Source: Auanema rhodensis (taxonomy: Eukaryota > Animalia > Nematoda). Taken from it: a stretch of 64,000 nt of DNA. The first letter of the stretch is position 1; each line of letters starts with the position of its first letter. The stretch spans positions 3,038,001-3,102,000 of the forward strand of contig OZ059895.1 in assembly GCA_964057225.1 (NCBI GenBank). The letters are read 5' to 3'. Below the pieces are notes generated by a model, which was not told where the DNA came from, searched no databases, and saw nothing but the letters and a program-made list of their open reading frames with translations. The position numbers and the translations under genes were made by a program. Below are positions 27,001 through 52,684 of this stretch, piece after piece.

Positions 27001-30000
27001 TGTTTTCCTACGTAGGCTAGTAAAACATGCCCTTCAAAGCATCAGAACATGTGATCACATTCCAATTTTTTTGTATCTATCTTGTAAAGATAGTAATATA
27101 TCATATGTTGAACACTATGTTGGAAAGATTTTAATTCGGTTTTTTTAATTTTTATTCAGTTTGTTTTTTAAACTTTGATTAAGAACTTTGATTTTTGTAC
27201 ACCCATAAATTATACGCAGCACAGGTTACCCTTAAATAATGAACTGACCGACTAATCAGACATGAATCTTTCCAAGTTCTGTTGCTTGAATGGATGTTTT
27301 CCTACGTAGGCTAGTAAAACATGCCCTTCAAAGCATCAGAACATGTGATCAAATTCCAATTTTTTTGTATCTATCTTGTAAAGATAGTAATATATCATAT
27401 GTTGAACACTATGTTGGAAAGATTTTAATTCGGTTTTTTTAATTTTTATTCAGTTTGTTTTTTAAACTTTGATTAAGAACTTTGATTTTTGTACACCCAT
27501 AAATTATACGCAGCACAGGTTACCCTTAAATAATAAACTGACCGACTAATCAGACATGGATCTTTCCAAGTTCTGTTGCTTGAACGGATGTTTTCCTACG
27601 TAGGCTAGTAAAACATGCCCTTCAAAGCATCAGAACATGTGATCACATTCCAATATTTTTGTATCTATCTTGTAAAGATAGTAATATATCATATGTTGAA
27701 CACTATGTTGGAAAGATTTTAATTCAGATTTTCTAACTTTTATTCAGTTTGTTTTTTAAACTTTGATTAAGAACTTTGATTTTTGTACACCCATAAATTA
27801 TACGCAGCACAGGTTACCCTTAAATAATGAACTGACCGTCTAATCAGACATGGATCTTCCCAAGTTCTGTTGCTTGAATGGATGTTTTCCTACGTAGGCT
27901 AGTAAAACATGCCCTTCAAAGCATCAGAACATGTGATCACATTCCAATTTTTTTGTATCTATCTTGTAAAGATAGTAATATATCATATGTTGAACACTAT
28001 GTTGGAAAGATTTTAATTCAGATTTTTTCAACTTTCACTCAGTTTGTTTTCTAAACTTTGATTAAGAACCTTGTTGTTTGTACACCCATAAAATATACGC
28101 AGCACAGGTTACCCTTAAATAATGAACTGACCGTCTAATCAGACATGGATCTTCCCAAGTTCTGTTGCTTGAATGGATGTTTTCCTACGTAGGCTAGTAA
28201 AACATGCCCTTCAAAGCATCAGAACATGTGATCAAATTCCAATTTTTTTGTATCTATCTTGTAAAGATAGTAATATATCATATGTTGAACACTATGTTGG
28301 AAAGATTTTCATTCAGATTTTTTAATTTTTATTCAGTTTGTTTTTTAAACTTTGATTAAGAACTTTGATTTTTGTACACCCATAAATTATACGCAGCACA
28401 GGTTACCCTTAAATAATGAACTGACCGACTAATCAGACATGGATCTTTCCAAGTTCTGTTGCTTGAACGGATGTTTTCCTACGTAGGCTAGTAAAACATG
28501 CCCTTCAAAGCATCAGAACATGTGATCACATTCCAATATTTTTGTATCTATCTTGTAAAGATAGTAATATATCATATGTTGAACAGTATGTTGTAAAGAT
28601 TTTAATTCAGATTTTCTAACTTTTATTCAGTTTGTTTTTTAAACTTTGATTAAGAACTTTGATTTTTGTACACCCATAAATTTTACGCAGCACAGGTTAC
28701 CCTTAAATAATGAACTGACCAACTAATCAGACATGGATCTTTCCTAGTTCTGTTGCTTGAATGGATGTTTTCATACGTAGGCTAGTAAAACATGCCCTTC
28801 AAAGCATCAGAACATGTGATCAAATTCCAATTTTTTTGTATCTATCTTGTAAAGATAGTAATATATCATATGTTGAACACTATGTTGGAAAGATTTTAAT
28901 TCAGATTTTCGAACTTTTATTCAGTTTGTTTTTTAAACTTTGATTAAGAACTTTGATTTTTGTACACCCATAAATTATACGCAGCACAGGTTACCCTAAA
29001 TTAATGAACTGACCGACTAATCAGACATGGATCTTTCCAAGTTCTGTTGCTTGAACGGATGTTTTCCTACGTAGGCTAGTAAAACATGCCCTTCAAAGCA
29101 TCAGAACATGTGATCAAATTCCAATTTTTTTGTATCTATCTTGTAAAGATAGTAATATATCATATGTTGAACACTATGTTGGAAAGATTTTAATTCAGAT
29201 TTTTTCAGCTTTCACTCAGTTTGTTTTCTAAACTTTGATTAAGAACCTTGTTGTTTGTACACCCATAAAATATACGCAGCACAGGTTACCCTTAAATAAT
29301 GAACTGACCGTCTAATCAGACATGGATCTTCCCAAGTTCTGTTGCTTGAATGGATGTTTTCTTACGTAGGCTAGTAAAACATGCCCTTCAAAGCATCAGA
29401 ACATGTGATCACATTCCAATTTTTTTGTATCTATCTTGTAAAGATAGTAATATATCATATGTTGAACACTATGTTGGAAAGATTTTAATTCAGATTTTCT
29501 AACTTTTATTCAGTTTGTTTTCTAAACTTTGATTAAGAACTTTGATTTTTGTACACCCATAAATTATACGCAGCACAGGTTACCCTTAAATAATGAACTG
29601 ACCGACTAATCAGACATGGATCTTTCCTAGTTCTGTTGCTTGAATGGATGTTTTCCTACGTAGGCTAGTAAAACATGACCTTCAAAGCATCAGAACATGT
29701 GATCACATTCCAATATTTTTGTATCTATCTTGTAAAGATAGTAATATATCATATGTTGAACACTATGTTGGAAAGATTTTAATTCAGATTTTCTAACTTT
29801 TATTCAGTTTGTTTTTTAAACTTTGATTAAGAACTTTGATTTTTGTACACCCATAAATTATACGCAGCACAGGTTACCCTTGAATAATGAACTGACCGAC
29901 TAATCAGACATGGATCTTTCCTAGTTCTGTTGCTTGAATGGATGTTTTCCTACGTAGGCTAGTAAAACATGCCCTTCAAAGCATCAGAACATGTGATCAC

Positions 30001-33000
30001 ATTCCAATTTTTTTGTATCTATCTTGTAAAGATAGTAATAAACTTTGATTTTTGTACACCCATAAATTATACGCAGCACAGGTTACCCTTAAATAATGAA
30101 CTGACCGACTAATCAGACATGGATCTTTCCAAGTTCTGTTGCTTGAACGGATGTTTTCCTACGTAGGCTAGTAAAACATGCCCTTCAAAGCATCAGAACA
30201 TGTGATCACATTCCAATATTTTTGTATCTATCTTGTAAAGATAGTAATATATCATATGTTGAACACTATGTTGGAAAGATTTTAATTCAGATTTTCTAAC
30301 TTTTATTCAGTTTGTTTTTTAAACTTTGATTAAGAACTTTGATTTTTGTACACCCATAAATTATACGCAGCACAGGTTACCCTTAAATAATGAACTGACC
30401 GTCTAATCAGACATGGATCTTCCCAAGTTCTGTTGCTTGAATGGATGTTTTCCTACGTAGGCTAGTAAAACATGCCCTTCAAAGCATCAGAACATGTGAT
30501 CACATTCCAATTTTTTTGTATCTATCTTGTAAAGATAGTAATATATCATATGTTGAACACTATGTTGGAAAGATTTTAATTCAGATTTTTTCAACTTTCA
30601 CTCAGTTTGTTTTCTAAACTTTGATTAAGAACCTTGTTGTTTGTACACCCATAAAATATACGCAGCACAGGTTACCCTTAAATAATGAACTGACCGTCTA
30701 ATCAGACATGGATCTTCCCAAGTTCTGTTGCTTGAATGGATGTTTTCCTACGTAGGCTAGTAAAACATGCCCTTCAAAGCATCAGAACATGTGATCAAAT
30801 TCCAATTTTTTTGTATCTATCTTGTAAAGATAGTAATATATCATATGTTGAACACTATGTTGGAAAGATTTTCATTCAGATTTTTTAATTTTTATTCAGT
30901 TTGTTTTTTAAACTTTGATTAAGAACTTTGATTTTTGTACACCCATAAATTATACGCAGCACAGGTTACCCTTAAATAATAAACTGACCGACTAATCAGA
31001 CATGGATCTTTCCAAGTTCTGTTGCTTGAACGGATGTTTTCCTACGTAGGCTAGTAAAACATGCCCTTCAAAGCATCAGAACATGTGATCACATTCCAAT
31101 ATTTTTGTATCTATCTTGTAAAGATAGTAATATATCATATGTTGAACAGTATGTTGTAAAGATTTTAATTCAGATTTTCTAACTTTTATTCAGTTTGTTT
31201 TTTAAACTTTGATTAAGAACTTTGATTTTTGTACACCCATAAATTTTACGCAGCACAGGTTACCCTTAAATAATGAACTGACCAACTAATCAGACATGGA
31301 TCTTTCCTAGTTCTGTTGCTTGAATGGATGTTTTCATACGTAGGCTAGTAAAACATGCCCTTCAAAGCATCAGAACATGTGATCACATTCCAATTTTTTT
31401 GTATCTATCTTGTAAAGATAGTAATATATCATATGTTGAACACTATGTTGGAAAGATTTTAATTCAGATTTTCGAACTTTTATTCAGTTTGTTTTTTAAA
31501 CTTTGATTAAGAACTTTGATTTTTGTACACCCATAAATTATACGCAGCACAGGTTACCCTAAATTAATGAACTGACCGACTAATCAGACATGGATCTTTC
31601 CAAGTTCTGTTGCTTGAACGGATGTTTTCCTACGTAGGCTAGTAAAACATGCCCTTCAAAGCATCAGAACATGTGATCAAATTCCAATTTTTTTGTATCT
31701 ATCTTGTAAAGATAGTAATATATCATATGTTGAACACTATGTTGGAAAGATTTTCATTCAGATTTTTTAATTTTTATTCAGTTTGTTTTTTAAACTTTGA
31801 TTAAGAACTTTGATTTTTGTACACCCATAAATTATACGCAGCACAGGTTACCCTTAAATAATGAACTGACCGACTAATCAGACATGGATCTTTCCAAGTT
31901 CTGTTGCTTGAACGGATGTTTTCCTACGTAGGCTAGTAAAACATGCCCTTCAAAGCATCAGAACATGTGATCACATTCCAATTTTTTTGTATCTATCTTG
32001 TAAAGATAGTAATATATCATATGTTGAACACTATGTTGGAAAGATTTTAATTCAGATTTTCTAACTTTTATTCAGTTTGTTTTCTAAACTTTGATTAAGA
32101 ACTTTGATTTTTGTACACCCATAAATTATACGCAGCACAGGTTACCCTTAAATAATGAACTGACCGACTAATCAGACATGGATCTTTCCTAGTTCTGTTG
32201 CTTGAATGGATGTTTTCCTACGTAGGCTAGTAAAACATGACCTTCAAAGCATCAGAACATGTGATCACATTCCAATATTTTTGTATCTATCTTGTAAAGA
32301 TAGTAATATATCATATGTTGAACACTATGTTGGAAAGATTTTAATTCAGATTTTCTAACTTTTATTCAGTTTGTTTTTTAAACTTTGATTAAGAACTTTG
32401 ATTTTTGTACACCCATAAATTATACGCAGCACAGGTTACCCTTGAATAATGAACTGACCGACTAATCAGACATGGATCTTTCCTAGTTCTGTTGCTTGAA
32501 TGGATGTTTTCCTACGTAGGCTAGTAAAACATGCCCTTCAAAGCATCAGAACATGTGATCACATTCCAATTTTTTTGTATCTATCTTGTAAAGATAGTAA
32601 TAAACTTTGATTTTTGTACACCCATAAATTATACGCAGCACAGGTTACCCTTAAATAATGAACTGACCGACTAATCAGACATGGATCTTTCCAAGTTCTG
32701 TTGCTTGAACGGATGTTTTCCTACGTAGGCTAGTAAAACATGCCCTTCAAAGCATCAGAACATGTGATCACATTTCAATTTTTTTGTATCTATCTTGTAA
32801 AGATAGTAATATATCATATGTTGAACACTATGTTGGAAAGATTTTAATTCAGATTTTTTCAACTTTCACTCAGTTTGTTTTCTAAACTTTGATTAAGAAC
32901 CTTGTTGTTTGTACACCCATAAAATATACGCAGCACAGGTTACCCTTAAATAATGAACTGACCGTCTAATCAGACATGGATCTTCCCAAGTTCTGTTGCT

Positions 33001-34506
33001 TGAATGGATGTTTTCCTACGTAGGCTAGTAAAACATGCCCTTCAAAGCATCAGAACATGTGATCACATTCCAATTTTTTTGTATCTATCTTGTAAAGATA
33101 GTAATATATCATATGTTGAACACTATGTTGGAAAGATTTTAATTCGGTTTTTTTAATTTTTATTCAGTTTGTTTTTTAAACTTTGATTAAGAACTTTGAT
33201 TTTTGTACACCCATAAATTATACGCAGCACAGGTTACCCTTAAATAATGAACTGACCGACTAATCAGACATGAATCTTTCCAAGTTCTGTTGCTTGAATG
33301 GATGTTTTCCTACGTAGGCTAGTAAAGCATGCCCTTCAAAGCATCAGAACATGTGATCAAATTCCAATTTTTTTGTATCTATCTTGTAAAGATAGTAATA
33401 TATCATATGTTGAACACTATGTTGGAAAGATTTTAATTCGGTTTTTTTAATTTTTATTCAGTTTGTTTTTTAAACTTTGATTAAGAACTTTGATTTTTGT
33501 ACACCCATAAATTATACGCAGCACAGGTTACCCTTAAATAATAAACTGACCGACTAATCAGACATGGATCTTTCCAAGTTCTGTTGCTTGAACGGATGTT
33601 TTCCTACGTAGGCTAGTAAAACATGCCCTTCAAAGCATCAGAACATGTGATCACATTCCAATATTTTTGTATCTATCTTGTAAAGATAGTAATATATCAT
33701 ATGTTGAACACTATGTTGGAAAGATTTTAATTCAGATTTTCTAACTTTTATTCAGTTTGTTTTTTAAACTTTGATTAAGAACTTTGATTTTTGTACACCC
33801 ATAAATTATACGCAGCACAGGTTACCCTTAAATAATGAACTGACCGTCTAATCAGACATGGATCTTCCCAAGTTCTGTTGCTTGAATGGATGTTTTCCTA
33901 CGTAGGCTAGTAAAACATGCCCTTCAAAGCATCAGAACATGTGATCACATTCCAATTTTTTTGTATCTATCTTGTAAAGATAGTAATATATCATATGTTG
34001 AACACTATGTTGGAAAGATTTTAATTCAGATTTTTTCAACTTTCACTCAGTTTGTTTTCTAAACTTTGATTAAGAACCTTGTTGTTTGTACACCCATAAA
34101 ATATACGCAGCACAGGTTACCCTTAAATAATGAACTGACCGTCTAATCAGACATGGATCTTCCCAAGTTCTGTTGCTTGAATGGATGTTTTCCTACGTAG
34201 GCTAGTAAAACATGCCCTTCAAAGCATCAGAACATGTGATCAAATTCCAATTTTTTTGTATCTATCTTGTAAAGATAGTAATATATCATATGTTGAACAC
34301 TATGTTGGAAAGATTTTCATTCAGATTTTTTAATTTTTATTCAGTTTGTTTTTTAAACTTTGATTAAGAACTTTGATTTTTGTACACCCATAAATTATAC
34401 GCAGCACAGGTTACCCTTAAATAATGAACTGACCGACTAATCAGACATGGATCTTTCCAAGTTCTGTTGCTTGAACGGATGTTTTCCTACGTAGGCTAGT
34501 AAAACA
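1..34506. repeat. Satellite DNA array, 294-295 bp monomer, left segment (about 120 monomers, continues beyond window start)
   Basis: The same unit (...tacgcagcacaggttacccttaaataatgaactgaccgactaatcagacatggatc...cctacgtaggctagtaaaacatgcccttcaaagcatcagaacatgtgatcac...) recurs head-to-tail in one orientation with only a few variant positions per copy. Copy number is estimated from length. Confidence 0.99.
34503..34506 (+). repeat. Target-site duplication, left copy (AACA)
   Basis: Intact monomers read gctagtaaAACAtgccc. The junctions read gctagtaaAACA|cgttcc and ggaacg|AACAtgccc. Confidence 0.93.
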
Positions 34507-34842
34507 CGTTCCGTTATGCTCTCGCATCTATCCTATAGACCAATGTAGTCTATAAGATGTGCGATACAGTGTTCCAGATGTAGCGGTATTAATAGAGCAT
34601 AATGGATAACATAAGACTCATGAAAAGAAAGGTTTATTCTACATAATGATTACAATAAGTTACGATAAGAATTAAAGAGATATAAACTATAGGTGAGCTC
34701 TGAGGAGATGACAAGCCATCCTTAGTCATTCCATGAGACAGAACTAAAGTCTGAGTTCCGTATAAAGGGCGTGTCAGCTCCTCTCGTCTCTTGTCGTCTA
34801 GCTCTAACCCGCCTGCTACGTATTGATCATCCGAATGGAACG
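34507..34842 (-). repeat. 3' LTR (336 bp)
   Basis: Direct repeat of 37940-38275. Identity ends after ...atggaacg (next base t here, a in the other copy). Confidence 0.96.
34633..34638 (-). terminator. Putative polyadenylation signal AATAAA in 3' LTR (twin at 38066-38071)
   Basis: Plus strand tttatt. On the minus strand it is followed by a T-rich tract (CCTTTCTTTTCAT), consistent with the R/U5 region. Confidence 0.6.
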
Positions 34843-36513
34843 TATGGAGTTAACTCTTGAAGAGCTCCTATCTCTTCCTCTCGATTGGTTTCTTCGTTCT
34901 TTAAATTGTACTCGCCTTTGTCCATTTCTTCCTCCTTGATTGTTATATCGAGGATTATAATTATTTTGGTACCAATTAGTACCATTATTGCTGTTTTGAC
35001 GCTCGTTATTTCTTCCAAAATTATTTGGACGGCGATTATTTCCAAAATTATTATTACGTTGTTGGAAATTGTTATAATTTGAACGGTTTTTATTTGTTTG
35101 ATAATTTTGATAATTTTGATAATTTTGATTATTTTGATTACCGCGCTGGTAACTTCGGTCAAAAGTTCTGTTATCTCTTCTCTCTTTATTGCGCGTAAAG
35201 GGGGCTAGTGCTTGGTTAACTGCATTCACTAGCATCGCCTGAGTGTCTGCCGTCTGGTTCAATATTGATTCTTCCCAGCGAGCAGCCTCAATCGCCTCAG
35301 CAAAGGTTTTGGGCCTTGCTCGGATCACTCCTGCCTTCAGAGTATTTTTAAGTCCTCTCAGGAAGGTTGATCTTAGTATGTGATCCTTATGTGGGTCATC
35401 ACTGGCAAAAGCACTAAGGCTTATTGTTCGCAAAGCCTGAGCAAAGGCATCAATCGAAAGATCCCCTTGACTAGTGTTTTGAAGGCTGATCAGTGCTGGG
35501 TCCTGATTATATTCGGGACAGAGCTTTGATGTTAAAGCTGCTAACAAATCGTTCCATGAACCCGATGTTTTAAGGTGTTCAGGAGTTTGTTTGTATGCTT
35601 CTTCTGCCGCATCATTTTTAAGAAGCAACGGCAGAAGAGTCAACCTTTCAGGTATCACTAGGCCAAGTGCATTAGCGAAGACATTAAATTTAGCGGTAAA
35701 GTCGCGGAAATTGCGGCTACCGTCGTAAACAGGGCAGTAGGGTGATGTTAAAACTTGGGCAATTGTTGTTTTCCCCGCTCCGGGTAAATTGGTTGCGGGC
35801 TCAGTCATTTTTTTCGGAACAGCTATTACTGTATGTGCAGATCTTGAACTTCCTGACGTAGGAGTAATGTGCTCTGTTTGGTTATATTGGTTAGGTGTCG
35901 TCAATTCGTCTAATCTTGGACTATTGAGAATTGGGGTTGATGTTTGTGGGTTATTTTTCAAAAGTTTTCTCTGCTCCGGTGAGGTGATTGGAGATAACGT
36001 ATAGCGCGTGTATGTATTGGGTATTGTAGCAAGTCGCTGTGCTCGGCTAGATTTTGGGTTTGGGTCTTTGGGTGAGCGATTCAATAAATCAACGACTTTG
36101 TTTTTGAGAGATTGTAAGCCTGTTGTTGAAGGTGAATCAGTAGGTTCTTGACTTGAGAGAGAGAGAGAGATATCAGAATTATTTAGATTTTTATTATTTT
36201 TATTTTTATGTATATTGGAAGAGCGTACCTTTTCTTTCGTAGTGGTGTTCGGTGTCTGTTCGTCTATCACCAAGGGTCGCTCGTCGTCTCCAGATGGTAT
36301 GTAGTCCGGATCACTAGAACGTTCTGAAGGAGAAAACGTACCTGCACGGGGCGTGTAAAATTTTTCCACGTTAGGCTTCTCCTCTGCTGTGTCTTCGTTG
36401 ATGATGGCGACACTTTGCGCGCGAGTTCGGCTTCTGGTTACTGGAGCTGAGTCGCGGGGATGCGGGTTGGAGTGCGTACTGAGAGGTACTGCTGAGTTAT
36501 ACCTTCTCTCCAC
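34816..36513 (-). CDS. gag: Retrotransposon Gag-like protein (Ty3/gypsy capsid type), up to 565 aa; start uncertain (GTG at 36513, first in-frame ATG at 35808 gives 330 aa)
   Basis: Capsid-type motifs in the expected order across about 35733-35260: PVYDGS..F.DF..KF, SWNDL..AL, major-homology-region-like Q-GD-SIDAF...L, TFLRGL, PKTFAEAIEAAR..E. These are flanked by an S/T/P-rich N-terminal region and an N/Q/Y/R-rich tail. No CCHC knuckle. Stop TAG at 34816-34818 is inside the 3' LTR. Confidence 0.9.
   Translation of the reverse strand: MERRYNSAVPLSTHSNPHPRDSAPVTRSRTRAQSVAIINEDTAEEKPNVEKFYTPRAGTFSPSERSSDPDYIPSGDDERPLVIDEQTPNTTTKEKVRSSNIHKNKNNKNLNNSDISLSLSSQEPTDSPSTTGLQSLKNKVVDLLNRSPKDPNPKSSRAQRLATIPNTYTRYTLSPITSPEQRKLLKNNPQTSTPILNSPRLDELTTPNQYNQTEHITPTSGSSRSAHTVIAVPKKMTEPATNLPGAGKTTIAQVLTSPYCPVYDGSRNFRDFTAKFNVFANALGLVIPERLTLLPLLLKNDAAEEAYKQTPEHLKTSGSWNDLLAALTSKLCPEYNQDPALISLQNTSQGDLSIDAFAQALRTISLSAFASDDPHKDHILRSTFLRGLKNTLKAGVIRARPKTFAEAIEAARWEESILNQTADTQAMLVNAVNQALAPFTRNKERRDNRTFDRSYQRGNQNNQNYQNYQNYQTNKNRSNYNNFQQRNNNFGNNRRPNNFGRNNERQNSNNGTNWYQNNYNPRYNNQGGRNGQRRVQFKERRNQSRGRDRSSSRVNSIRSIRMINT
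34865..34882 (-). promoter_or_regulatory. Purine-rich tract GAGAGGAAGAGATAGGAG, candidate displaced polypurine tract
   Basis: 17 of 18 bases are purines on the minus strand, but the tract is 22 nt from the 3' LTR edge and lies inside gag coding sequence. Confidence 0.3.
35097..35140. repeat. 9-bp tandem repeat (tttgataat, about 5 copies) encoding NQN/YQN repeats in the Gag tail
   Basis: tttgataattttgataattttgataattttgattattttgatta; translates on the minus strand as NQNNQNYQNYQNYQ. Confidence 0.9.
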
Positions 36514-36603
36514 CTTGTTAGGACTCTTGGTTTGAAAAAACCTCGAGTGTCTGATTACGTGTGGGATGATGGAATTTGAACGTAATTGGGTGGGTATGTA
36601 CGT

Positions 36604-36807
36604 TTAGTTGTTGGTGGTAAGTTGGGAAAAGCTAGATTGAGACTGACAACTGGTTTGGTCAAGTCGGAAGGATAGGAATGAATCCAAGGTTCTGGCCATA
36701 ACTTTAGATCCGCCTTCTACCGTACTTTGAAATTGGACTTTGGTTATCTTGGTCTTTTGGGTCCAATTTGTATAGCATTTGCATTTTTCTTTTCTCTTTG
36801 CACGCAT
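36604..36807 (-). CDS. 67-aa upstream ORF in frame with gag (possible uORF or detached gag N-terminus)
   Basis: ATG at 36807, TAA at 36606-36604, then 30 sense codons to the gag GTG at 36513. No recognisable domain. Confidence 0.25.
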   Translation of the reverse strand: MRAKRKEKCKCYTNWTQKTKITKVQFQSTVEGGSKVMARTLDSFLSFRLDQTSCQSQSSFSQLTTNN

Positions 36808-37926
36808 TATGGATGATTGCCTGGTCTCAATGGGCTTATTCCCTTCTCTTTTTTATAGAATTTTTTGATTTTTAGTCGCAAACTCCCTTAGGCATTCCAA
36901 AAAGTTGCATTAAAATTAGACTTTGGTAATCCATCACTCTATCCAAGAAGAATTACTAGTCCCAATTGCATACTTAATTCGTTCGTTCATGGTTCAACGG
37001 GAAGTAAGGATCTTTTTTAAGAAATCTACCGTAGTCGTTTTGCAAACCAAAGATCTCGTTTTATAATATTGAAGTTACATAGCTGACTAAAATTTACAAG
37101 AACTATACGAAATTATAAAAAGAATAAGATGATTTGGAATTGAGTCTCATGTTTCTAAACAACAAAACGGTATGAGGAAGGTGACATATAGTATGGGGAG
37201 AAAATCCAACTAATATGCTTTAGCCAACTCGACCTGACGAATAAGTTTAAATTGGGAGATCAGTTTGTAAGAATATCGCAGGATTTTTCGGACTATAGCG
37301 AATGTAAGTTATTAAATTAAACATCCTCTCACTTGTTGTGAGGTTTCCCGTACGATTTTTAAGCGTTTTGTTATGTTTTTGGATGGTAAATGCTAAAAGT
37401 TGTCTGAACGATTTTAAACGCAAAATATAATAGTCCTTATCGCAAAATTATTTAAAATTCAAATTGGCATGCTTTTCATCCACAAAATTTAAGAAATAAC
37501 TGGAGTTATTCTTTCCTCAAAGCCGAAATCAATCCTTAAAAGGAGAATGGTGTGGGTAATAATCAAAATATATATAAAATCTTTAGGTGAATCTGTTCAC
37601 GAATTCAGCCTAAAGTCCTCATGTGGCTTCGAGGTCGGGTAACAGTATAATCAGATGTTAATAGCAAGGATATGTGACTTAGGTTCAGACATGACAAAAT
37701 TGTGAACAACGGGATCAAGTAAAATAAATTCTTCCCAAAATGTATAATTTTACTCTCTTATTATGAGAGTTCCTTGCATCTGTTCCCTATAACGATGTTG
37801 GCCCCTCCGTTTTGTGTTTTAGCGTGGAGAAGATGGCAATGGATAAGAGAAAGTTGAAAAGAAAATGAATATTGCAAGAGTGAATAAAATTTAAGAAAAT
37901 AAGAGAATAGTAAAAGAAACGTTCGA
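36808..37926 (-). other. AT-rich non-coding leader of the retroelement (about 1.1 kb)
   Basis: Lies between the PBS and the first ORF. No ORF of 60 aa or more in the track, and the parts I translated gave only short frames. Confidence 0.6.
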
Positions 37927-37939
37927 GGTGGAACCTCCA
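37927..37939 (-). promoter_or_regulatory. Primer-binding site, tRNA-Gln type (TGGAGGTTCCACC)
   Basis: The plus strand reads ggtggaacctcca, the 3' end of eukaryotic tRNA-Gln (...GGTGGAACCT plus CCA) as I recall it, and the start of the known retroviral PBS-Gln (TGGAGGTTCCACC...). It lies 0 nt from the LTR edge. Confidence 0.9.
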
Positions 37940-38275
37940 CGTTCCGTTATGCTCTCGCATCTATCCTATAGACCAATGTAGTCTATAAGATGTGCGATAC
38001 AGTGTTCCAGATGTAGCGGTATTAATAGAGCATAATGGATAACATAAGACTCATGAAAAGAAAGGTTTATTCTACATAATGATTACAATAAGTTACGATA
38101 AGAATTAAAGAGATATAAACTATAGGTGAGCTCTGAGGAGATGACAAGCCATCCTTAGTCATTCCATGAGACAGAACTAAAGTCTGAGTTCCGTATAAAG
38201 GGCGTGTCAGCTCCTCTCGTCTCTTGTCGTCTAGCTCTAACCCGCCTGCTACGTATTGATCATCCGAATGGAACG
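37940..38275 (-). repeat. 5' LTR (336 bp)
   Basis: Matches 34507-34842 at offset 3433 with no difference seen. Bounded by the inverted repeat CGTTCC...GGAACG and followed directly on the minus strand by the TGG of the PBS. Confidence 0.96.
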
Positions 38276-38279
38276 AACA
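38276..38279 (+). repeat. Target-site duplication, right copy (AACA)
   Basis: Removing 34507-38279 restores an ordinary monomer. Confidence 0.93.
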
Positions 38280-41200
38280 TGCCCTTCAAAGCATCAGAAC
38301 ATGTGATCACATTCCAATATTTTTGTATCTATCTTGTAAAGATAGTAATATATCATATGTTGAACAGTATGTTGTAAAGATTTTAATTCAGATTTTCTAA
38401 CTTTTATTCAGTTTGTTTTTTAAACTTTGATTAAGAACTTTGATTTTTGTACACCCATAAATTATACGCAGCACAGGTTACCCTTAATTAATGAACTGAC
38501 CAACTAATCAGACATGGATCTTTCCTAGTTCTGTTGCTTGAATGGATGTTTTCCTACGTAGGCTAGTAAAACATGCCCTTCAAAGCATCAGAACATGTGA
38601 TCAAATTCCAATTTTTTTGTATCTATCTTGTAAAGATAGTAATATATCATATGTTGAACACTATGTTGGAAAGATTTTAATTCAGATTTTCGAACTTTTA
38701 TTCAGTTTGTTTTTTAAACTTTGATTAAGAACTTTGATTTTTGTACACCCATAAATTATACGCAGCACAGGTTACCCTAAATTAATGAACTGACCGACTA
38801 ATCAGACATGGATCTTTCCAAGTTCTGTTGCTTGAACGGATGTTTTCCTACGAAGGCTAGTAAAACATGCCCTTCAAAGCATCAGAACATGTGATCAAAT
38901 TCCAATTTTTTTGTATCTATCTTGTAAAGATAGTAATATATCATATGTTGAACACTATGTTGGAAAGATTTTAATTCAGATTTTCGAACTTTTATTCAGT
39001 TTGTTTTTTAAACTTTGATTAAGAACTTTGATTTTTGTACACCCATAAATTATACGCAGCACAGGTTACCCTAAATTAATGAACTGACCGACTAATCAGA
39101 CATGGATCTTTCCAAGTTCTGTTGCTTGAACGGATGTTTTCCTACGAAGGCTAGTAAAACATGCCCTTCAAAGCATCAGAACATGTGATCACATTCCAAT
39201 ATTTTTGTATCTATCTTGTAAAGATAGTAATAAACTTTGATTTTTGTACACCCATAAATTATACGCAGCACAGGTTACCCTTAAATAATGAACTGACCGA
39301 CTAATCAGACATGGATCTCTCCAAGTTCTGTTGCTTGAACGGATGTTTTCCTACGTAGGCTAGTAAAACATGCCCTTCAAAGCATCAGAACATGTGATCA
39401 CATTCCAATATTTTTGTATCTATCTTGTAAAGATAGTAATATATCATATGTTGAACACTATGTTGGAAAGATTTTAATTCAGATTTTCTAACTTTTATTC
39501 AGTTTGTTTTTTAAACTTTGATTAAGAACTTTGATTTTTGTACACCCATAAATTATACGCAGCACAGGTTACCCTTAAATAATGAACTGACCGTTTAATC
39601 AGACATGGATCTTCCCAAGTTCTGTTGCTTGAATGGATGTTTTCCTACGTAGGCTAGTAAAACATGCCCTTCAAAGCATCAGAACATGTGATCAAATTCC
39701 AATTTTTTTGTATCTATCTTGTAAAGATAGTAATATATCATATGTTGAACACTATGTTGGAAAGATTTTCATTCAGATTTTTTAATTTTTATTCAGTTTG
39801 TTTTTTAAACTTTGATTAAGAACTTTGATTTTTGTACACCCATAAATTATACGCAGCACAGGTTACCCTTAAATAATGAACTGACCGACTAATCAGACAT
39901 GGATCTTTCCAAGTTCTGTTGCTTGAACGGATGTTTTCCTACGTAGGCTAGTAAAACATGCCCTTCAAAGCATCAGAACATGTGATCACATTCCAATATT
40001 TTTGTATCTATCTTGTAAAGATAGTAATATATCATATGTTGAACACTATGTTGGAAAGATTTTAATTCAGATTTTCGAACTTTTATTCAGTTTGTTTTTT
40101 AAACTTTGATTAAGAACTTTGATTTTTGTACACCCATAAATTATACGCAGCACAGGTTACCCTTAAATAATGAACTGACCAACTAATCAGACATGGATCT
40201 TTCCAAGTTCTGTTGCTTGAACGGATGTTTTCCTACGTAGGCTAGTAAAACATGCCCTTCAAACATCAGAACATGTGATCACATTCCAATATTTTTGTAT
40301 CTATCTTGTAAAGATAGTAATATATCATATGTTGAACACTATGTTGGAAAGATTTTAATTCAGATTTTCTAACTTTTATTCAGTTTGTTTTTTAAACTTT
40401 GATTAAGAACTTTGATTTTTGTACACCCATAAATTATACGCAGCACAGGTTACCCTTAAATAATGAACTGACCGTTTAATCAGACATGGATCTTCCCAAG
40501 TTCTGTTGCTTGAATGAATGTTTTCCTACGTAGGCTAGTAAAACATGCCCTTCAAAGCATCAGAACATGTGATCAAATTCCAATTTTTTTGTATCTATCT
40601 TGTAAAGATAGTAATATATCATATGTTGAACACTATGTTGGAAAGATTTTCATTCAGATTTTTTAATTTTTATTCAGTTTGTTTTTTAAACTTTGATTAA
40701 GAACTTTGATTTTTGTACACCCATAAATTATACGCAGCACAGGTTACCCTTAAATAATGAACTGACCGACTAATCAGACATGGATCTTTCCAAGTTCTGT
40801 TGCTTGAACGGATGTTTTCCTACGTAGGCTAGTAAAACATGCCCTTCAAAGCATCAGAACATGTGATCACATTCCAATATTTTTGTATCTATCTTGTAAA
40901 GATAGTAATATATCATATGTTGAACACTATGTTGGAAAGATTTTAATTCAGATTTTCGAACTTTTATTCAGTTTGTTTTTTAAACTTTGATTAAGAACTT
41001 TGATTTTTGTACACCCATAAATTATACGCAGCACAGGTTACCCTTAAATAATGAACTGACCAACTAATCAGACATGGATCTTTCCTAGTTCTGTTGCTTG
41101 AATGGATGTTTTCCTACGTAGGCTAGTAAAACATGCCCTTCAAAGCATCAGAACATGTGATCAAATTCCAATTTTTTTGTATCTATCTTGTAAAGATAGT

Positions 41201-44200
41201 AATATATCATATGTTGAACACTATGTTGGAAAGATTTTAATTCAGATTTTCGAACTTTTATTCAGTTTGTTTTTTAAACTTTGATTAAGAACTTTGATTT
41301 TTGTACACCCATAAATTATACGCAGCACAGGTTACCCTTAATTAATGAACTGACCGACTAATCAGACATGGATCTTTCCAAGTTCTGTTGCTTGAACGGA
41401 TGTTTTCCTACGAAGGCTAGTAAAACATGCCCTTCAAAGCATCAGAACATGTGATCACATTCCAATATTTTTGTATCTATCTTGTAAAGATAGTAATATA
41501 TCATATGTTGAACACTATGTTGGATAGATTTTAATTCAGATTTTTTCAACTTTCACTCAGTTTGTTTTCTAAACTTTGATTAAGAACTTTGATTTTTGTA
41601 CACCCATAAATTATACGCAGCACAGGTTACCCTTAAATAATGAACTGACCGACTAATCAGACATGGATCTTTCCTAGTTCTGTTGCTTGAATGGATGTTT
41701 TCCTACGTAGGCTAGTAAAACATGACCTTCAAAGCATCAGAACATGTGATCACATTCCAATATTTTTGTATCTATCTTGTAAAGATAGTAATATATCATA
41801 TGTTGAACACTATGTTGGAAATATTTTAATTCAGATTTTCTAACTTTTATTCAGTTTGTTTTTTAAACTTTGATTAAGAACTTTGATTTTTGTACACCCA
41901 TAAATTATACGCAGCACAGGTTACCCTTGAATAATGAACTGACCGACTAATCAGACATGGATCTTTCCTAGTTCTGTTGCTTGAATGGATGTTTTCCTAC
42001 GTAGGCTAGTAAAACATGCCCTTCAAAGCATCAGAACATGTGATCACATTCCAATTTTTTTGTATCTATCTTGTAAAGATAGTAATAAACTTTGATTTTT
42101 GTACACCCATAAATTATACGCAGCACAGGTTACCCTTAAATAATGAACTGACCGACTAATCAGACATGGATCTTTCCAAGTTCTGTTGCTTGAACGGATG
42201 TTTTCCTACGTAGGCTAGTAAAACATGCCCTTCAAAGCATCAGAACATGTGATCACATTTCAATTTTTTTGTATCTATCTTGTAAAGATAGTAATATATC
42301 ATATGTTGAACACTATGTTGGAAAGATTTTAATTCAGATTTTTTCAACTTTCACTCAGTTTGTTTTCTAAACTTTGATTAAGAACCTTGTTGTTTGTACA
42401 CCCATAAAATATACGCAGCACAGGTTACCCTTAAATAATGAACTGACCGTCTAATCAGACATGGATCTTCCCAAGTTCTGTTGCTTGAATGGATGTTTTC
42501 CTACGTAGGCTAGTAAAACATGCCCTTCAAAGCATCAGAACATGTGATCACATTCCAATATTTTTGTATCTATCTTGTAAAGATAGTAATATATCATATG
42601 TTGAACACTATGTTGGAAAGATTTTAATTCGGTTTTTTTAATTTTTATTCAGTTTGTTTTTTAAACTTTGATTAAGAACTTTGATTTTTGTACACCCATA
42701 AATTATACGCAGCACAGGTTACCCTTAAATAATGAACTGACCGACTAATCAGACATGAATCTTTCCAAGTTCTGTTGCTTGAATGGATGTTTTCCTACGT
42801 AGGCTAGTAAAACATGCCCTTCAAAGCATCAGAACATGTGATCAAATTCCAATTTTTTTGTATCTATCTTGTAAAGATAGTAATATATCATATGTTGAAC
42901 ACTATGTTGGAAAGATTTTAATTCGGTTTTTTTAATTTTTATTCAGTTTGTTTTTTAAACTTTGATTAAGAACTTTGATTTTTGTACACCCATAAATTAT
43001 ACGCAGCACAGGTTACCCTTAAATAATAAACTGACCGACTAATCAGACATGGATCTTTCCAAGTTCTGTTGCTTGAACGGATGTTTTCCTACGTAGGCTA
43101 GTAAAACATGCCCTTCAAAGCATCAGAACATGTGATCACATTCCAATATTTTTGTATCTATCTTGTAAAGATAGTAATATATCATATGTTGAACACTATG
43201 TTGGAAAGATTTTAATTCAGATTTTCTAACTTTTATTCAGTTTGTTTTTTAAACTTTGATTAAGAACTTTGATTTTTGTACACCCATAAATTATACGCAG
43301 CACAGATTACCCTTAAATAATGAACTGACCGTCTAATCAGACATGGATCTTCCCAAGTTCTGTTGCTTGAATGGATGTTTTCCTACGTAGGCTAGTAAAA
43401 CATGCCCTTCAAAGCATCAGAACATGTGATCACATTCCAATTTTTTTGTATCTATCTTGTAAAGATAGTAATATATCATATGTTGAACACTATGTTGGAA
43501 AGATTTTAATTCAGATTTTTTCAACTTTCACTCAGTTTGTTTTCTAAACTTTGATTAAGAACCTTGTTGTTTGTACACCCATAAAATATACGCAGCACAG
43601 GTTACCCTTAAATAATGAACTGACCGTCTAATCAGACATGGATCTTCCCAAGTTCTGTTGCTTGAATGGATGTTTTCCTACGTAGGCTAGTAAAACATGC
43701 CCTTCAAAGCATCAGAACATGTGATCAAATTCCAATTTTTTTGTATCTATCTTGTAAAGATAGTAATATATCATATGTTGAACACTATGTTGGAAAGATT
43801 TTCATTCAGATTTTTTAATTTTTATTCAGTTTGTTTTTTAAACTTTGATTAAGAACTTTGATTTTTGTACACCCATAAATTATACGTAGCACAGGTTACC
43901 CTTAAATAATGAACTGACCGACTAATCAGACATGGATCTTTCCAAGTTCTGTTGCTTGAACGGATGTTTTCCTACGTAGGCTAGTAAAACATGCCCTTCA
44001 AAGCATCAGAACATGTGATCACATTCCAATATTTTTGTATCTATCTTGTAAAGATAGTAATATATCATATGTTGAACAGTATGTTGGAAAGATTTTAATT
44101 CAGATTTTCTAACTTTTATTCAGTTTGTTTTTTAAACTTTGATTAAGAACTTTGATTTTTGTACACCCATAAATTATACGTAGCACAGGTTACCCTTAAA

Positions 44201-47200
44201 TAATGAACTGACCGACTAATCAGACATGGATCTTTCCAAGTTCTGTTGCTTGAACGGATGTTTTCCTACGTAGGCTAGTAAAACATGCCCTTCAAAGCAT
44301 CAGAACATGTGATCACATTCCAATATTTTTGTATCTATCTTGTAAAGATAGTAATATATCATATGTTGAACACTATGTTGGAAAGATTTTCATTCAGATT
44401 TTTTAATTTTTATTCAGTTTGTTTTTTAAACTTTGATTAAGAACTTTGATTTTTGTACACCCATAAATTATACGTAGCACAGGTTACCCTTAAATAATGA
44501 ACTGACCGACTAATCAGACATGGATCTTTCCAAGTTCTGTTGCTTGAACGGATGTTTTCCTACGTAGGCTAGTAAAACATGCCCTTCAAAGCATCAGAAC
44601 ATGTGATCACATTCCAATATTTTTGTATCTATCTTGTAAAGATAGTAATATATCATATGTTGAACAGTATGTTGGAAAGATTTTAATTCAGATTTTCTAA
44701 CTTTTATTCAGTTTGTTTTTTAAACTTTGATTAAGAACTTTGATTTTTGTACACCCATAAATTATACGTAGCACAGGTTACCCTTAAATAATGAACTGAC
44801 CGACTAATCAGACATGGATCTTCCCAAGTTCTGTTGCTTGAATGGATGTTTTCCTACGTAGGCTAGTAAAACATGCCCTTCAAAGCATCAGAACATGTGA
44901 TCAAATTCCAATTTTTTTGTATCTATCTTGTAAAGATAGTAATATATCATATGTTGAACACTATGTTGGAAAGATTTTCATTCAGATTTTTTAATTTTTA
45001 TTCAGTTTGTTTTTTAAACTTTGATTAAGAACTTTGATTTTTGTACACCCATAAATTATACGTAGCACAGGTTACCCTTAAATAATGAACTGACCGACTA
45101 ATCAGACATGGATCTTTCCAAGTTCTGTTGCTTGAACGGATGTTTTCCTACGTAGGCTAGTAAAACATGCCCTTCAAAGCATCAGAACATGTGATCACAT
45201 TCCAATATTTTTGTATCTATCTTGTAAAGATAGTAATATATCATATGTTGAACACTATGTTGGAAAGATTTTCATTCAGATTTTTTAATTTTTATTCAGT
45301 TTGTTTTTTAAACTTTGATTAAGAACTTTGATTTTTGTACACCCATAAATTATACGTAGCACAGGTTACCCTTAAATAATGAACTGACCGACTAATCAGA
45401 CATGGATCTTTCCAAGTTCTGTTGCTTGAACGGATGTTTTCCTACGTAGGCTAGTAAAACATGCCCTTCAAAGCATCAGAACATGTGATCACATTCCAAT
45501 ATTTTTGTATCTATCTTGTAAAGATAGTAATATATCATATGTTGAACAGTATGTTGGAAAGATTTTAATTCAGATTTTCTAACTTTTATTCAGTTTGTTT
45601 TTTAAACTTTGATTAAGAACTTTGATTTTTGTACACCCATAAATTATACGTAGCACAGGTTACCCTTAAATAATGAACTGACCGACTAATCAGACATGGA
45701 TCTTCCCAAGTTCTGTTGCTTGAATGGATGTTTTCCTACGTAGGCTAGTAAAACATGCCCTTCAAAGCATCAGAACATGTGATCAAATTCCAATTTTTTT
45801 GTATCTATCTTGTAAAGATAGTAATATATCATATGTTGAACACTATGTTGGAAAGATTTTAATTCAGATTTTCTAACTTTTATTCAGTTTGTTTTTTAAA
45901 CTTTGATTAAGAACTTTGATTTTTGTACACCCATAAATTATACGTAGCACAGGTTACCCTTAAATAATGAACTGACCGACTAATCAGACATGGATCTTTC
46001 CAAGTTCTGTTGCTTGAACGGATGTTTTCCTACGTAGGCTAGTAAAACATGCCCTTCAAAGCATCAGAACATGTGATCACATTCCAATATTTTTGTATCT
46101 ATCTTGTAAAGATAGTAATATATCATATGTTGAACAGTATGTTGGAAAGATTTTAATTCAGATTTTCTAACTTTTATTCAGTTTGTTTTTTAAACTTTGA
46201 TTAAGAACTTTGATTTTTGTACACCCATAAATTATACGCAGCACAGGTTACCCTTAAATAATGAACTGACCAACTAATCAGACATGGATCTTTCCTAGTT
46301 CTGTTGCTTGAATGGATGTTTTCCTACGTAGGCTAGTAAAACATGCCCTTCAAAGCATCAGAACATGTGATCAAATTCCAATTTTTTTGTATCTATCTTG
46401 TAAAGATAGTAATATATCATATGTTGAACACTATGTTGGAAAGATTTTAATTCAGATTTTCGAACTTTTATTCAGTTTGTTTTTTAAACTTTGATTAAGA
46501 ACTTTGATTTTTGTACACCCATAAATTATACGCAGCACAGGTTACCCTAAATTAATGAACTGACCGACTAATCAGACATGGATCTTTCCAAGTTCTGTTG
46601 CTTGAACGGATGTTTTCCTACGAAGGCTAGTAAAACATGCCCTTCAAAGCATCAGAACATGTGATCACATTCCAATATTTTTGTATCTATCTTGTAAAGA
46701 TAGTAATAAACTTTGATTTTTGTACACCCATAAATTATACGCAGCACAGGTTACCCTTAAATAATGAACTGACCGACTAATCAGACATGGATCTCTCCAA
46801 GTTCTGTTGCTTGAACGGATGTTTTCCTACGTAGGCTAGTAAAACATGCCCTTCAAAGCATCAGAACATGTGATCACATTTCAATTTTTTTGTATCTATC
46901 TTGTAAAGATAGTAATATATCATATGTTGAACACTATGTTGAAAAGATTTTAATTCAGATTTTTTCAACTTTCACTCAGTTTGTTTTCTAAACTTTGATT
47001 AAGAACCTTGTTGTTTGTACACCCATAAAATATACGCAGCACAGGTTACCCTTAAATAATGAACTGACCGTTTAATCAGACATGGATCTTCCCAAGTTCT
47101 GTTGCTTGAATGGATGTTTTCCTACGTAGGCTAGTAAAACATGCCCTTCAAAGCATCAGAACATGTGATCAAATTCCAATTTTTTTGTATCTATCTTGTA

Positions 47201-52640: not shown

Positions 52641-52684
52641 AACATGCCCTTCAAAGCATCAGAACATGCCCTTCAAAGCATCAG
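52641..52684 (+). repeat. 22-bp tandem duplication inside one satellite monomer
   Basis: aacatgcccttcaaagcatcag occurs twice, followed by aacatgtg. Confidence 0.95.

What the first reader, a model, noticed from the sequence alone, without database searches (positions are those of the whole stretch)
34507..38275. Very young gag-only LTR retroelement embedded in a satellite array
Seen: intact LTR-PBS-leader-gag-LTR layout, LTRs with no visible difference, clean AACA duplication, open gag, and no room or motifs for pol. Known: gag-only non-autonomous LTR elements (TR-GAG) are described in plants and need pol in trans; some gypsy lineages favour centromeric satellites. Inference: this may be an active family that supplies its own capsid, borrows RT and integrase from an autonomous partner, and possibly targets this satellite. 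One copy cannot separate that from a full element that lost pol after inserting.
Basis: partly seen in the sequence, partly recalled or inferred. Interest (0 to 1): 0.85.

Follow-up and report, generated by a model that had tools for sequence, protein, structure and literature searches.

The report
Gag-only remnant of nematode retrovirus-like element
A single, very recent insertion in a 294-bp satellite array is a nematode Ty3/gypsy "GAG-ENV-POL" retrovirus-like element that has kept its LTRs, primer site, leader and capsid gene but has lost env, pol and the plus-strand primer site. It is an ordinary kind of deletion derivative, more likely a dead end than an active gag-only family.

Summary
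The window is 64 kb of one 294-bp satellite with a single 3,769-bp insertion at 34507-38275. The insertion has two 336-bp LTRs with 0 mismatches and a 4-bp AACA duplication. It has one long gag frame on the minus strand and no trace of env or pol.

The host is a nematode, not a plant. The gag core has a Ty3/Arc-type capsid fold. Its nearest relatives are Auanema and Caenorhabditis elements of the published GAG-ENV-POL errantivirus lineage with a herpesvirus-gB-type env. The primer site matches 13 nt of the tRNA-Gln 3' end.

Three points weaken the "active TR-GAG family" reading:
- The break lies inside the conserved gag/env junction motif (...RVNSI) and abuts the first base of the 3' LTR. No polypurine tract is left, and gag ends 8 codons inside the LTR.
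- The long gag frame, whose N-terminal part is homologous to Auanema copies, carries an in-frame TAA at 36606-36604. Only a 330-aa core is open from an ATG.
- One of about 200 identical satellite target motifs is occupied, so there is no evidence of targeting.

No second copy could be reached with these tools, so a one-off deletion (favoured, about 0.6) and a replicating family (about 0.25) remain unseparated. Interest is modest.

The parts
1..34506 (+). 294/295-bp satellite array, left of the insertion (about 32% GC, one orientation, with recurrent 209/210-bp short monomers)
34503..34506 (.). Target-site duplication, left copy (AACA)
   Evidence: satellite consensus reads ...GTAAAACATGCCC..., so one AACA is duplicated
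34507..34842 (-). 3' LTR of the element (336 bp). The ends are CGTTCC...GGAACG. AATAAA lies at 34638-34633.
34816..34842 (-). Last 8 gag codons (RSIRMINT) plus the TAG stop, all encoded by LTR sequence
34843..34857 (-). Codons for RVNSI, the first half of the conserved gag/env junction motif R-[VI]-N-[AS]-[ILV]-[FYIV]-[DS]-P. The deletion breakpoint lies directly after it. No polypurine tract lies here.
34858..35163 (-). N/Q/R/G-rich gag tail with no zinc knuckle. It is predicted disordered and includes the purine run GAGAGGAAGAGATAGGAG, 22 nt from the LTR.
35164..35751 (-). Two-lobed capsid (CA) domain of Ty3/Arc type
   Evidence: Pfam Retrotrans_gag and Ty3_capsid, weak; profile against PDB: dArc2 1.6e-10, Ty3 Gag 1.7e-4; AlphaFold2 block-mean pLDDT 84-98 over about residues 21-210; fold matches to dArc, PEG10, Ty3 and retroviral CA
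34819..35808 (-). 330-aa gag core, open from ATG 35808. The Met aligns with the first residue of Auanema P0001 and lies near a Met in P0078.
35809..36603 (-). 265 open codons upstream, in the same frame: an S/T/P/N-rich N-terminal gag extension with weak homology to the N-terminal region of Auanema copies
   Evidence: (P of no stop about 2e-6)
36604..36606 (-). In-frame TAA that interrupts the long gag frame
   Evidence: no consensus-like intron spans it
36607..36807 (-). 67 codons from ATG 36807 in the gag frame, upstream of the TAA. Coding-like base composition begins near here.
36808..37926 (-). T-rich untranslated leader of about 1.1 kb, with no ORF that has a family and no similarity to relatives
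   Evidence: relatives also have leaders of about 1.4 kb or more
37927..37939 (-). Primer-binding site TGGAGGTTCCACC, flush with the 5' LTR. It equals the first 13 nt of a PBS designed against the tRNA-Gln1 3' end.
   Evidence: PMC1592299; similar PBS in relative L003
37940..38275 (-). 5' LTR (336 bp), with TATA-like TTTATA at 38199-38194 and AATAAA at 38071-38066
38276..38279 (.). Target-site duplication, right copy (AACA)
38276..64000 (+). Satellite array, right of the insertion

Best explanation
The insertion is an env- and pol-less deletion derivative of a nematode Ty3/gypsy errantivirus of the GAG-ENV-POL type with a herpesvirus-gB-like env. It sits on the minus strand.

Shown:
- An integrase-type insertion into one satellite monomer (4-bp duplication).
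- Identical LTRs, a tRNA-Gln-type PBS, a 1.1-kb leader and a gag with a Ty3/Arc capsid fold.
- Everything from the middle of the conserved gag/env junction motif to the base before the 3' LTR is missing, including the polypurine tract.

Inferred:
- The copy cannot move by itself. Lacking an LTR-adjacent plus-strand primer site and carrying an in-frame stop in its long gag frame, it is most likely a one-off dead end rather than a member of an adapted gag-only family.
- The breakpoint falls exactly on the first LTR base, so I favour an event anchored on an LTR end. The leading candidate is a same-family, same-orientation copy inserted at the gag/env boundary of a full element, followed by LTR-LTR recombination that removed env, pol, the PPT and one LTR.
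- A jump during plus-strand DNA synthesis in the cycle that made this insertion is the alternative one-off route.
For: - Structure.
- Capsid identity.
- Nematode relatives and their domain order (gag, then gB-like fusion domain, then PR-RT-RH-IN): and PMC13524379.
- Auanema copies with up to 58% gag identity (P0002 on L001, P0008, and L005, which carries P0001 at 38%) continue past gag into a signal peptide plus env, and L001 also into RT/RNase H.
- No env or pol remnant in the window.
- The junction motif is cut after RVNSI and the LTR starts at the next base; the upstream 16 nt are not a purine tract.
- A distant relative, L003, has a purine run (GGTAGGGGA) directly before its inferred TG...CA LTR.
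- In-frame TAA with no plausible intron.
- N-terminal region is homologous to Auanema, so the interrupted long frame is the family's normal gag.
- No second copy or solo LTR in 64 kb.
Against: - Only one copy could be examined.
- Both breakpoints fall on functional boundaries (gag/env junction and LTR edge). A random nested insertion predicts this only about 0.5% of the time, whereas selection on a replicating gag-only family would predict it.
- The 330-aa gag core is intact, with a Met conserved in relatives, so a capsid protein could still be made.
- A purine-rich run lies 22 nt upstream of the LTR. From memory, retroviruses with damaged PPTs keep low infectivity, so a missing adjacent PPT is not an absolute bar.
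- Identical LTRs leave little time for two insertions plus a recombination.
Confidence: 0.6

Rival explanations
1. A self-propagating gag-only non-autonomous family, like plant TR-GAG. The 3.8-kb RNA is packaged (perhaps by its own Gag) and is reverse-transcribed and integrated by RT and IN of an autonomous GAG-ENV-POL partner. Plus-strand priming would come from the purine run in the gag tail, with the extra 22 nt trimmed at integration.
For: - Clean LTRs and target-site duplication, with 0/336 LTR differences.
- PBS intact and flush with the LTR.
- gag core open, with a confidently folded capsid.
- The deletion removes exactly env plus pol and keeps all of gag up to the junction motif.
- The purine run GAGAGGAAGAGATAGGAG is 22 nt from the LTR.
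Against: - No PPT adjoins U3, and the 5' LTR shows no trace of the 22 nt that priming from the upstream run would add.
- The long gag frame is interrupted by TAA.
- gag has no stop of its own and terminates by running into the LTR.
- No second copy in the window, in metagenome scans or as an exact product on record.
- The relatives that could be inspected carry env and pol.
Confidence: 0.25
2. The deletion arose during reverse transcription in the same cycle that produced this insertion. Plus-strand strong-stop DNA was primed normally from the PPT of a full-length genome. The extending plus strand then jumped from the gag/env boundary to the U3 edge, where a natural nick lies. The mismatch was resolved after integration.
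For: This explains correct LTR ends and a target-site duplication despite the missing PPT, and why one endpoint is the first base of U3. There is a short imperfect direct repeat at the junction: TCCATACG then TCCATTCG, read.
Against: The observed junction is not the one a switch within that repeat would give. There is no independent evidence, and the model needs a heteroduplex to be resolved in favour of the deleted strand.
Confidence: 0.15
3. Assembly artefact: a collapsed or chimeric join inside a repetitive region produced a false gag|LTR junction.
For: The satellite context is hard to assemble. Collapsed LTRs do occur, for example the 141-nt terminal overlap of contig L003.
Against: Both LTRs are complete, flanked by a matching 4-bp duplication, and the satellite phase is restored to the base. 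A collapse would not create that.
Confidence: 0.03

Closest known systems
Nematode GAG-ENV-POL errantiviruses (Ty3/gypsy, Metaviridae) with HSV-gB-type env; Sacco et al. 2022, J Gen Virol 103:1739, as cited in PMC13524379 (eLife 2026, RP108449)
   Same: The gag core is homologous to gag of proteins that carry gag, a gB-like fusion domain and PR-RT-RH-IN in that order. It shares the gag/env junction motif, a long leader and a tRNA-Gln-like PBS. The hosts of the relatives are nematodes.
   Different: No env, pol or PPT. LTR ends are CG...CG instead of the TG...CA inferred for relative L003. Gag identity to the nearest available copies is only 38-58%, so it belongs to a family not present in the searched collections.
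TR-GAG non-autonomous LTR retrotransposons of plants (named from memory as Chaparro et al. 2015; the term is in use in plant papers)
   Same: An LTR-PBS-gag-LTR layout with no pol, dependent on trans RT and IN.
   Different: Animal host and a different lineage. No PPT, gag with no stop of its own, and multicopy status unknown. Here the structure looks like a truncation at the gag/env joint rather than an adapted design.
Internally deleted or recombinant LTR elements produced by nested insertion plus LTR-LTR recombination (general knowledge of LTR retrotransposon decay)
   Same: Internal sequence abuts the first base of an LTR without a PPT, and only the outer target-site duplication is retained.
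   Different: No intermediate or second target-site duplication is visible, and the position at the gag/env boundary is unexplained.
Ty3 Gag, and the domesticated capsids Arc/dArc, PNMA2 and PEG10
   Same: Two-lobed CA fold: profile E-value 1.6e-10 to dArc2 and 1.7e-4 to Ty3 Gag, with matching fold hits.
   Different: It sits between LTRs in a satellite array with no sign of domestication. It has a long disordered N-terminal extension and an N/Q/R-rich tail without a zinc knuckle.

Membership tests
Ty3/gypsy (Metaviridae) LTR retrotransposon | Direct LTRs flanked by a short (4-6 bp) target-site duplication | tested here: met
   336-bp LTRs with 0 mismatches, and AACA on both sides
Ty3/gypsy (Metaviridae) LTR retrotransposon | tRNA primer-binding site next to the 5' LTR | tested here: met
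   TGGAGGTTCCACC is flush with the LTR. It is identical to the first 13 nt of a PBS built against the human tRNA-Gln1 3' end. The nematode tRNA itself was not available.
Ty3/gypsy (Metaviridae) LTR retrotransposon | Polypurine tract directly upstream of the 3' LTR | tested here: not met
   The upstream 16 nt are AAGAGTTAACTCCATA. The nearest purine run is 22 nt away, inside gag coding sequence.
Ty3/gypsy (Metaviridae) LTR retrotransposon | Gag with a Ty3-type capsid | tested here: met
Ty3/gypsy (Metaviridae) LTR retrotransposon | Pol with PR-RT-RNase H-IN | tested here: not met
   No tblastn hit outside the capsid region and no room for pol: the internal region is 3,097 bp.
Ty3/gypsy (Metaviridae) LTR retrotransposon | TG...CA LTR termini | tested here: not met
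   Termini are CGTTCC...GGAACG, with an 8-of-9 terminal inverted repeat.
Nematode GAG-ENV-POL errantivirus (gB-type env) | Gag homologous to that of lineage members | tested here: met
   77 hits, all to the gag core. The long hits carry the gB-like domain and pol.
Nematode GAG-ENV-POL errantivirus (gB-type env) | gB-type env between gag and pol | tested here: not met
   Absent. The frame breaks inside the gag/env junction motif.
TR-GAG-type non-autonomous element | LTRs, PBS and a gag ORF as the only coding capacity | tested here: met
TR-GAG-type non-autonomous element | PPT retained, that is, cis signals complete for replication | tested here: not met
TR-GAG-type non-autonomous element | Several copies of the same deleted structure at different sites (evidence of mobilisation) | not testable with these tools
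   The host genome is not searchable here. None was found in the window, in metagenome scans or by exact-product look-ups.
Satellite- or centromere-targeting retroelement | Non-random association of copies with the satellite, or a targeting domain in the integrase | tested here: inconclusive
   n = 1. One of 200 exact target motifs is occupied, and the element has no integrase.

The most novel reading that the evidence does not exclude
This is one copy of a replicating gag-only family in a nematode, the first animal counterpart of plant TR-GAG elements. It would derive from a GAG-ENV-POL errantivirus by precise loss of env and pol, use a purine run in the gag tail as a surrogate plus-strand primer site, and integrate through non-canonical CG...CG LTR ends, possibly with a preference for this satellite.
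Probability: 0.2. Interest if true: 0.55.

Novelty: new member of a known kind. Interest (0 to 1): 0.3.

Why it matters
The finding places a recently active member of the nematode GAG-ENV-POL (gB-env) errantivirus lineage inside a long satellite array. It also gives a clean example of a derivative cut exactly at the gag/env joint and at the LTR edge.

If more copies with the same junction exist, it would be an animal example of a capsid-only parasite of an endogenous retrovirus. It would also be a natural test of how strictly an LTR-adjacent polypurine tract is needed. If the structure is unique, it is routine decay of an LTR element, useful mainly for annotation and as a dating marker for the satellite array.

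Tried and rejected
Searches that found nothing:
- The search for homologous proteins with the 565-aa ORF and with the gag core gave no hits. Low-complexity words probably dominated; the exhaustive HMMER search succeeded instead.
- Exact-product look-ups for the 565-aa, 330-aa and 67-aa ORFs: none on record.
- Metagenome scans with the gag protein and with the LTR/PBS junction: nothing.
- Rfam on the element: no family.
- tRNA scans of the window and of the fetched loci: none, so the nematode primer tRNA could not be checked directly.
- Leader and N-terminal region against the relatives' DNA: no tblastx hit and only one 23-nt blastn match.
- Literature search for the satellite sequence or a 294-bp nematode satellite: nothing. 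The species stays unidentified.
- Supplementary PBS tables of PMC13524379 are not held.

Readings considered and rejected:
- An intron that removes the TAA. No GT...AG pair spanning it resembles nematode splice consensus.
- A splice donor at the gag/env joint. The distant relatives L002 and L004 have no GT there; only the Auanema copy L005 has a weak one.
- Plus-strand orientation of the element. The PBS, TATA-to-AATAAA order and gag all agree on the minus strand.
- A 338-bp LTR with a 2-bp duplication. It would leave no TGG-initiated PBS.
Full report
**1. What is there**

The whole 64-kb window is a tandem array of one 294/295-bp satellite. It is about 32% GC and runs in a single orientation. 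One foreign block interrupts it at 34507-38275.
- The block is bounded by two 336-bp direct repeats, 34507-34842 and 37940-38275. They are identical at every base (BLASTN).
- AACA is present on both sides, at 34503-34506 and 38276-38279. The uninterrupted monomer reads ...GTAAAACATGCCC....
- Monomer spacing across the block is 4067 = 294 + 3769 + 4, so the satellite phase is restored to the base.
- The block is richer in G+C (38-39%) than the array.

**2. Orientation and cis elements**

The only long frame is on the minus strand.
- Read on that strand, the LTR has a TATA-like TTTATA at position 77 and AATAAA at position 205.
- The 5' LTR (38275 down to 37940) is followed at once by TGGAGGTTCCACC.
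- That 13-mer is identical to the first 13 nt of a primer-binding site built to match the 3' end of human tRNA-Gln1 (PMC1592299). That a nematode tRNA-Gln has the same 3' end is an inference; no tRNA gene was available to test it.
- A distant relative, L003, has TGGAGGTCCACGCC at the equivalent place.
- The LTR ends are CGTTCC...GGAACG, an 8-of-9 terminal inverted repeat, rather than TG...CA.
- Between the PBS and the first ATG of the gag frame lie about 1.1 kb of T-rich sequence with no family match and no similarity to relatives. Relatives also have about 1.4 kb or more before gag, so a long leader is a family trait.

**3. The protein**

Pfam gives only sub-threshold Retrotrans_gag and Ty3_capsid hits. 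An exhaustive HMMER search found 77 relatives, all matching residues 240-555 of the 565-aa ORF.
- A 46-sequence profile matches solved structures: dArc2 (1.6e-10), PNMA2, dArc1, Arc and Ty3 Gag (1.7e-4).
- An AlphaFold2 model has block-mean pLDDT of 84-98 over about residues 21-210 of the 330-aa core. It is all-helical and two-lobed.
- Its best fold matches are dArc, PEG10, Ty3 and retroviral capsids, with TM-score up to 0.68 on dArc2.
- The tail is N/Q/R/G-rich and predicted disordered, and it has no zinc knuckle.

Gag identity is therefore firm.

**4. Whose element it is**

The nearest proteins come from Auanema sp. JU1783 (38-58% identity), Caenorhabditis remanei and C. japonica. The host is a nematode, not a plant.
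- Long relatives carry, in order, gag, a herpesvirus-gB-like fusion domain, protease, RT, RNase H and integrase.
- One metagenome contig (L003) encodes all of this in a single 2,534-aa frame.
[quoted passage not shown] 2022).

**5. What is missing, and where the break is**

tblastn with eight long relatives hits only the capsid region of the window element. The same queries detect post-gag env-region and RT/RNase H sequence in the Auanema contig L001, which carries the closest gag.

In the alignment of gag tails, relatives share R-[VI]-N-[AS]-[ILV]-[FYIV]-[DS]-P. A hydrophobic signal-like segment follows, then the cysteine-framed start of env. Auanema P0008 and contig L005 show the same continuation.

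The window's gag reads ...SSRVNSI, and the next base (34842) is the first base of the 3' LTR. The last eight codons and the stop (34818-34816) are LTR sequence. The deletion therefore runs from the middle of the gag/env joint to the LTR edge, and three things follow:
- Gag is essentially complete.
- Env and pol are wholly gone.
- The polypurine tract is gone too. The 16 nt before the LTR are AAGAGTTAACTCCATA.

The only purine run, GAGAGGAAGAGATAGGAG, lies 22 nt away. It is ordinary coding sequence for the R/G-rich tail. In L003 a purine run (GGTAGGGGA) sits directly before the inferred TG...CA LTR.

**6. State of gag**

The frame is open for 595 codons (36603-34819). The longest open frame in 2000 shuffles was 218 codons.
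- The 265 codons upstream of ATG 35808 are S/T/P/N-rich. The chance of no stop over that stretch is about 2e-6.
- They show weak but position-consistent similarity to the N-terminal regions of Auanema copies. One of these, P0078, has a similarly long N-terminal region in frame with its capsid.
- The long form is therefore the family's normal gag. In the window that frame begins at ATG 36807 and is interrupted by TAA at 36606-36604.
- No GT...AG pair spanning the stop resembles a nematode intron.
- Downstream, the first ATG is 35808. It aligns with the first residue of Auanema P0001 and lies near a Met in P0078. A 330-aa capsid-plus-tail product remains possible.

"Open gag" is thus true for the core but not for the full-length frame.

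**7. Age**

The LTRs show 0 differences in 336 bp. By the rule of three, divergence is below about 0.9%.
- The insertion has not been duplicated with the surrounding repeat units, and there is no other copy or solo LTR in 64 kb.
- "Very young" is supported. I give no absolute date because the species and its mutation rate are unknown.
- LTR-LTR gene conversion cannot be excluded.

**8. Satellite targeting**

The 15-nt target motif occurs 200 times exactly in the window and is occupied once. The element encodes no integrase.
- From general knowledge, rhabditid nematodes are holocentric, so the centromeric-gypsy analogy does not transfer.
- With n = 1, nothing can be said for targeting.

**9. 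How it arose and whether it works**

The 4-bp duplication shows that a linear DNA with two LTR ends was inserted by an integrase. Either that DNA already lacked env and pol, or the loss came later.

For a replicating gag-only family:
- Both breakpoints sit on functional boundaries.
- The PBS and the gag core are intact.

Against it:
- There is no LTR-adjacent plus-strand primer site.
- The 5' LTR lacks the 22 extra bases that priming from the upstream purine run would add.
- The long gag frame has an in-frame stop, and gag has no stop of its own.
- All relatives that could be inspected carry env and pol.

For a one-off event, the exact coincidence with the first LTR base points to a process anchored on an LTR end:
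- A second same-family copy inserts at the gag/env joint, followed by LTR-LTR recombination. This naturally yields internal sequence abutting an LTR with no PPT and only the outer duplication.
- A plus-strand jump to the U3 edge occurs in the very cycle that made this insertion.
- An autointegration circle recombines with a solo LTR. This would also produce the junction but needs more steps.

None of these explains the gag/env position (roughly 0.5% by chance). I therefore put the one-off reading at about 0.6 and the family reading at about 0.25.

**10. Comparison and novelty**

- By gag homology the element belongs to the nematode GAG-ENV-POL errantivirus lineage, but it fails that lineage's env and pol criteria. 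It is a derivative, not a full member.
- It has the layout of plant TR-GAG elements but fails the PPT criterion, and multicopy status could not be tested.
- Deleted LTR elements are commonplace. The lineage and host are of recent interest, and the breakpoints are unusually tidy. I rate it a new member of a known kind, with modest interest.

**11. Limits**

- The host genome could not be searched.
- The protein collections hold no gag closer than 58% identity.
- Metagenome scans and exact look-ups were blank.
Breaks are described only.
- Nothing in the window looks human.

Noticed in passing
window 34507-34842 and 37940-38275: The LTR termini are CGTTCC...GGAACG (an 8-of-9 inverted repeat) instead of the usual TG...CA. 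The insertion still made a clean 4-bp duplication. A distant relative (L003) appears to have TG...CA ends.
   Followed up: partly
window 34843-34854 (plus strand) versus 37927-37939 (minus strand): Read outward from each LTR's inner edge, both junctions look alike: GGAACG-TA-TGGAGTT on one side and GGAACG-TGGAGGTT (the PBS) on the other. So a PBS-like TGGAG..TT lies in antisense next to the 3' LTR. This is possibly chance (roughly 0.5%).
   Followed up: no
window 1-64000; short monomers start at 5712, 7100, 13704, 16266 ... 63751: 23 monomers are 209/210 bp, with an 85-bp internal deletion covering monomer positions 76-160. They recur at regular spacings: 798 bp at 56-59 kb and 62-64 kb, and about 2562 bp at 13-21 kb. 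The array therefore has higher-order repeat blocks of different ages.
   Followed up: partly
window 52641-52690: A 22-bp unit (AACATGCCCTTCAAAGCATCAG) is tandemly duplicated. It starts at the same AACA of the monomer where the element inserted. It probably arose by slippage between the two AACATG words of the monomer.
   Followed up: partly
L003:1-9889 (JGI metagenome 3300015615): The contig has a 141-nt terminal overlap, that is, a collapsed LTR. It encodes gag, a gB-like env and PR-RT-RH-IN in one uninterrupted 2,534-aa frame, so env with its signal peptide sits in the middle of a polyprotein. How env and pol are expressed separately is not obvious.
   Followed up: no
window 36310-36340 (minus strand); L005:150-200: A short motif in the disordered gag N-terminus, S-S-D-x-(D/N)-Y-x-P-S, is shared between the window and an Auanema copy. 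It could be a late-domain-like or docking motif.
   Followed up: no
L005:1-1663 (Auanema sp. JU1783): The Auanema copy that encodes P0001 also has an in-frame stop between its N-terminal region and the capsid core, and a frameshift just before the gag/env joint. Degraded copies of this family are common in that assembly.
   Followed up: partly
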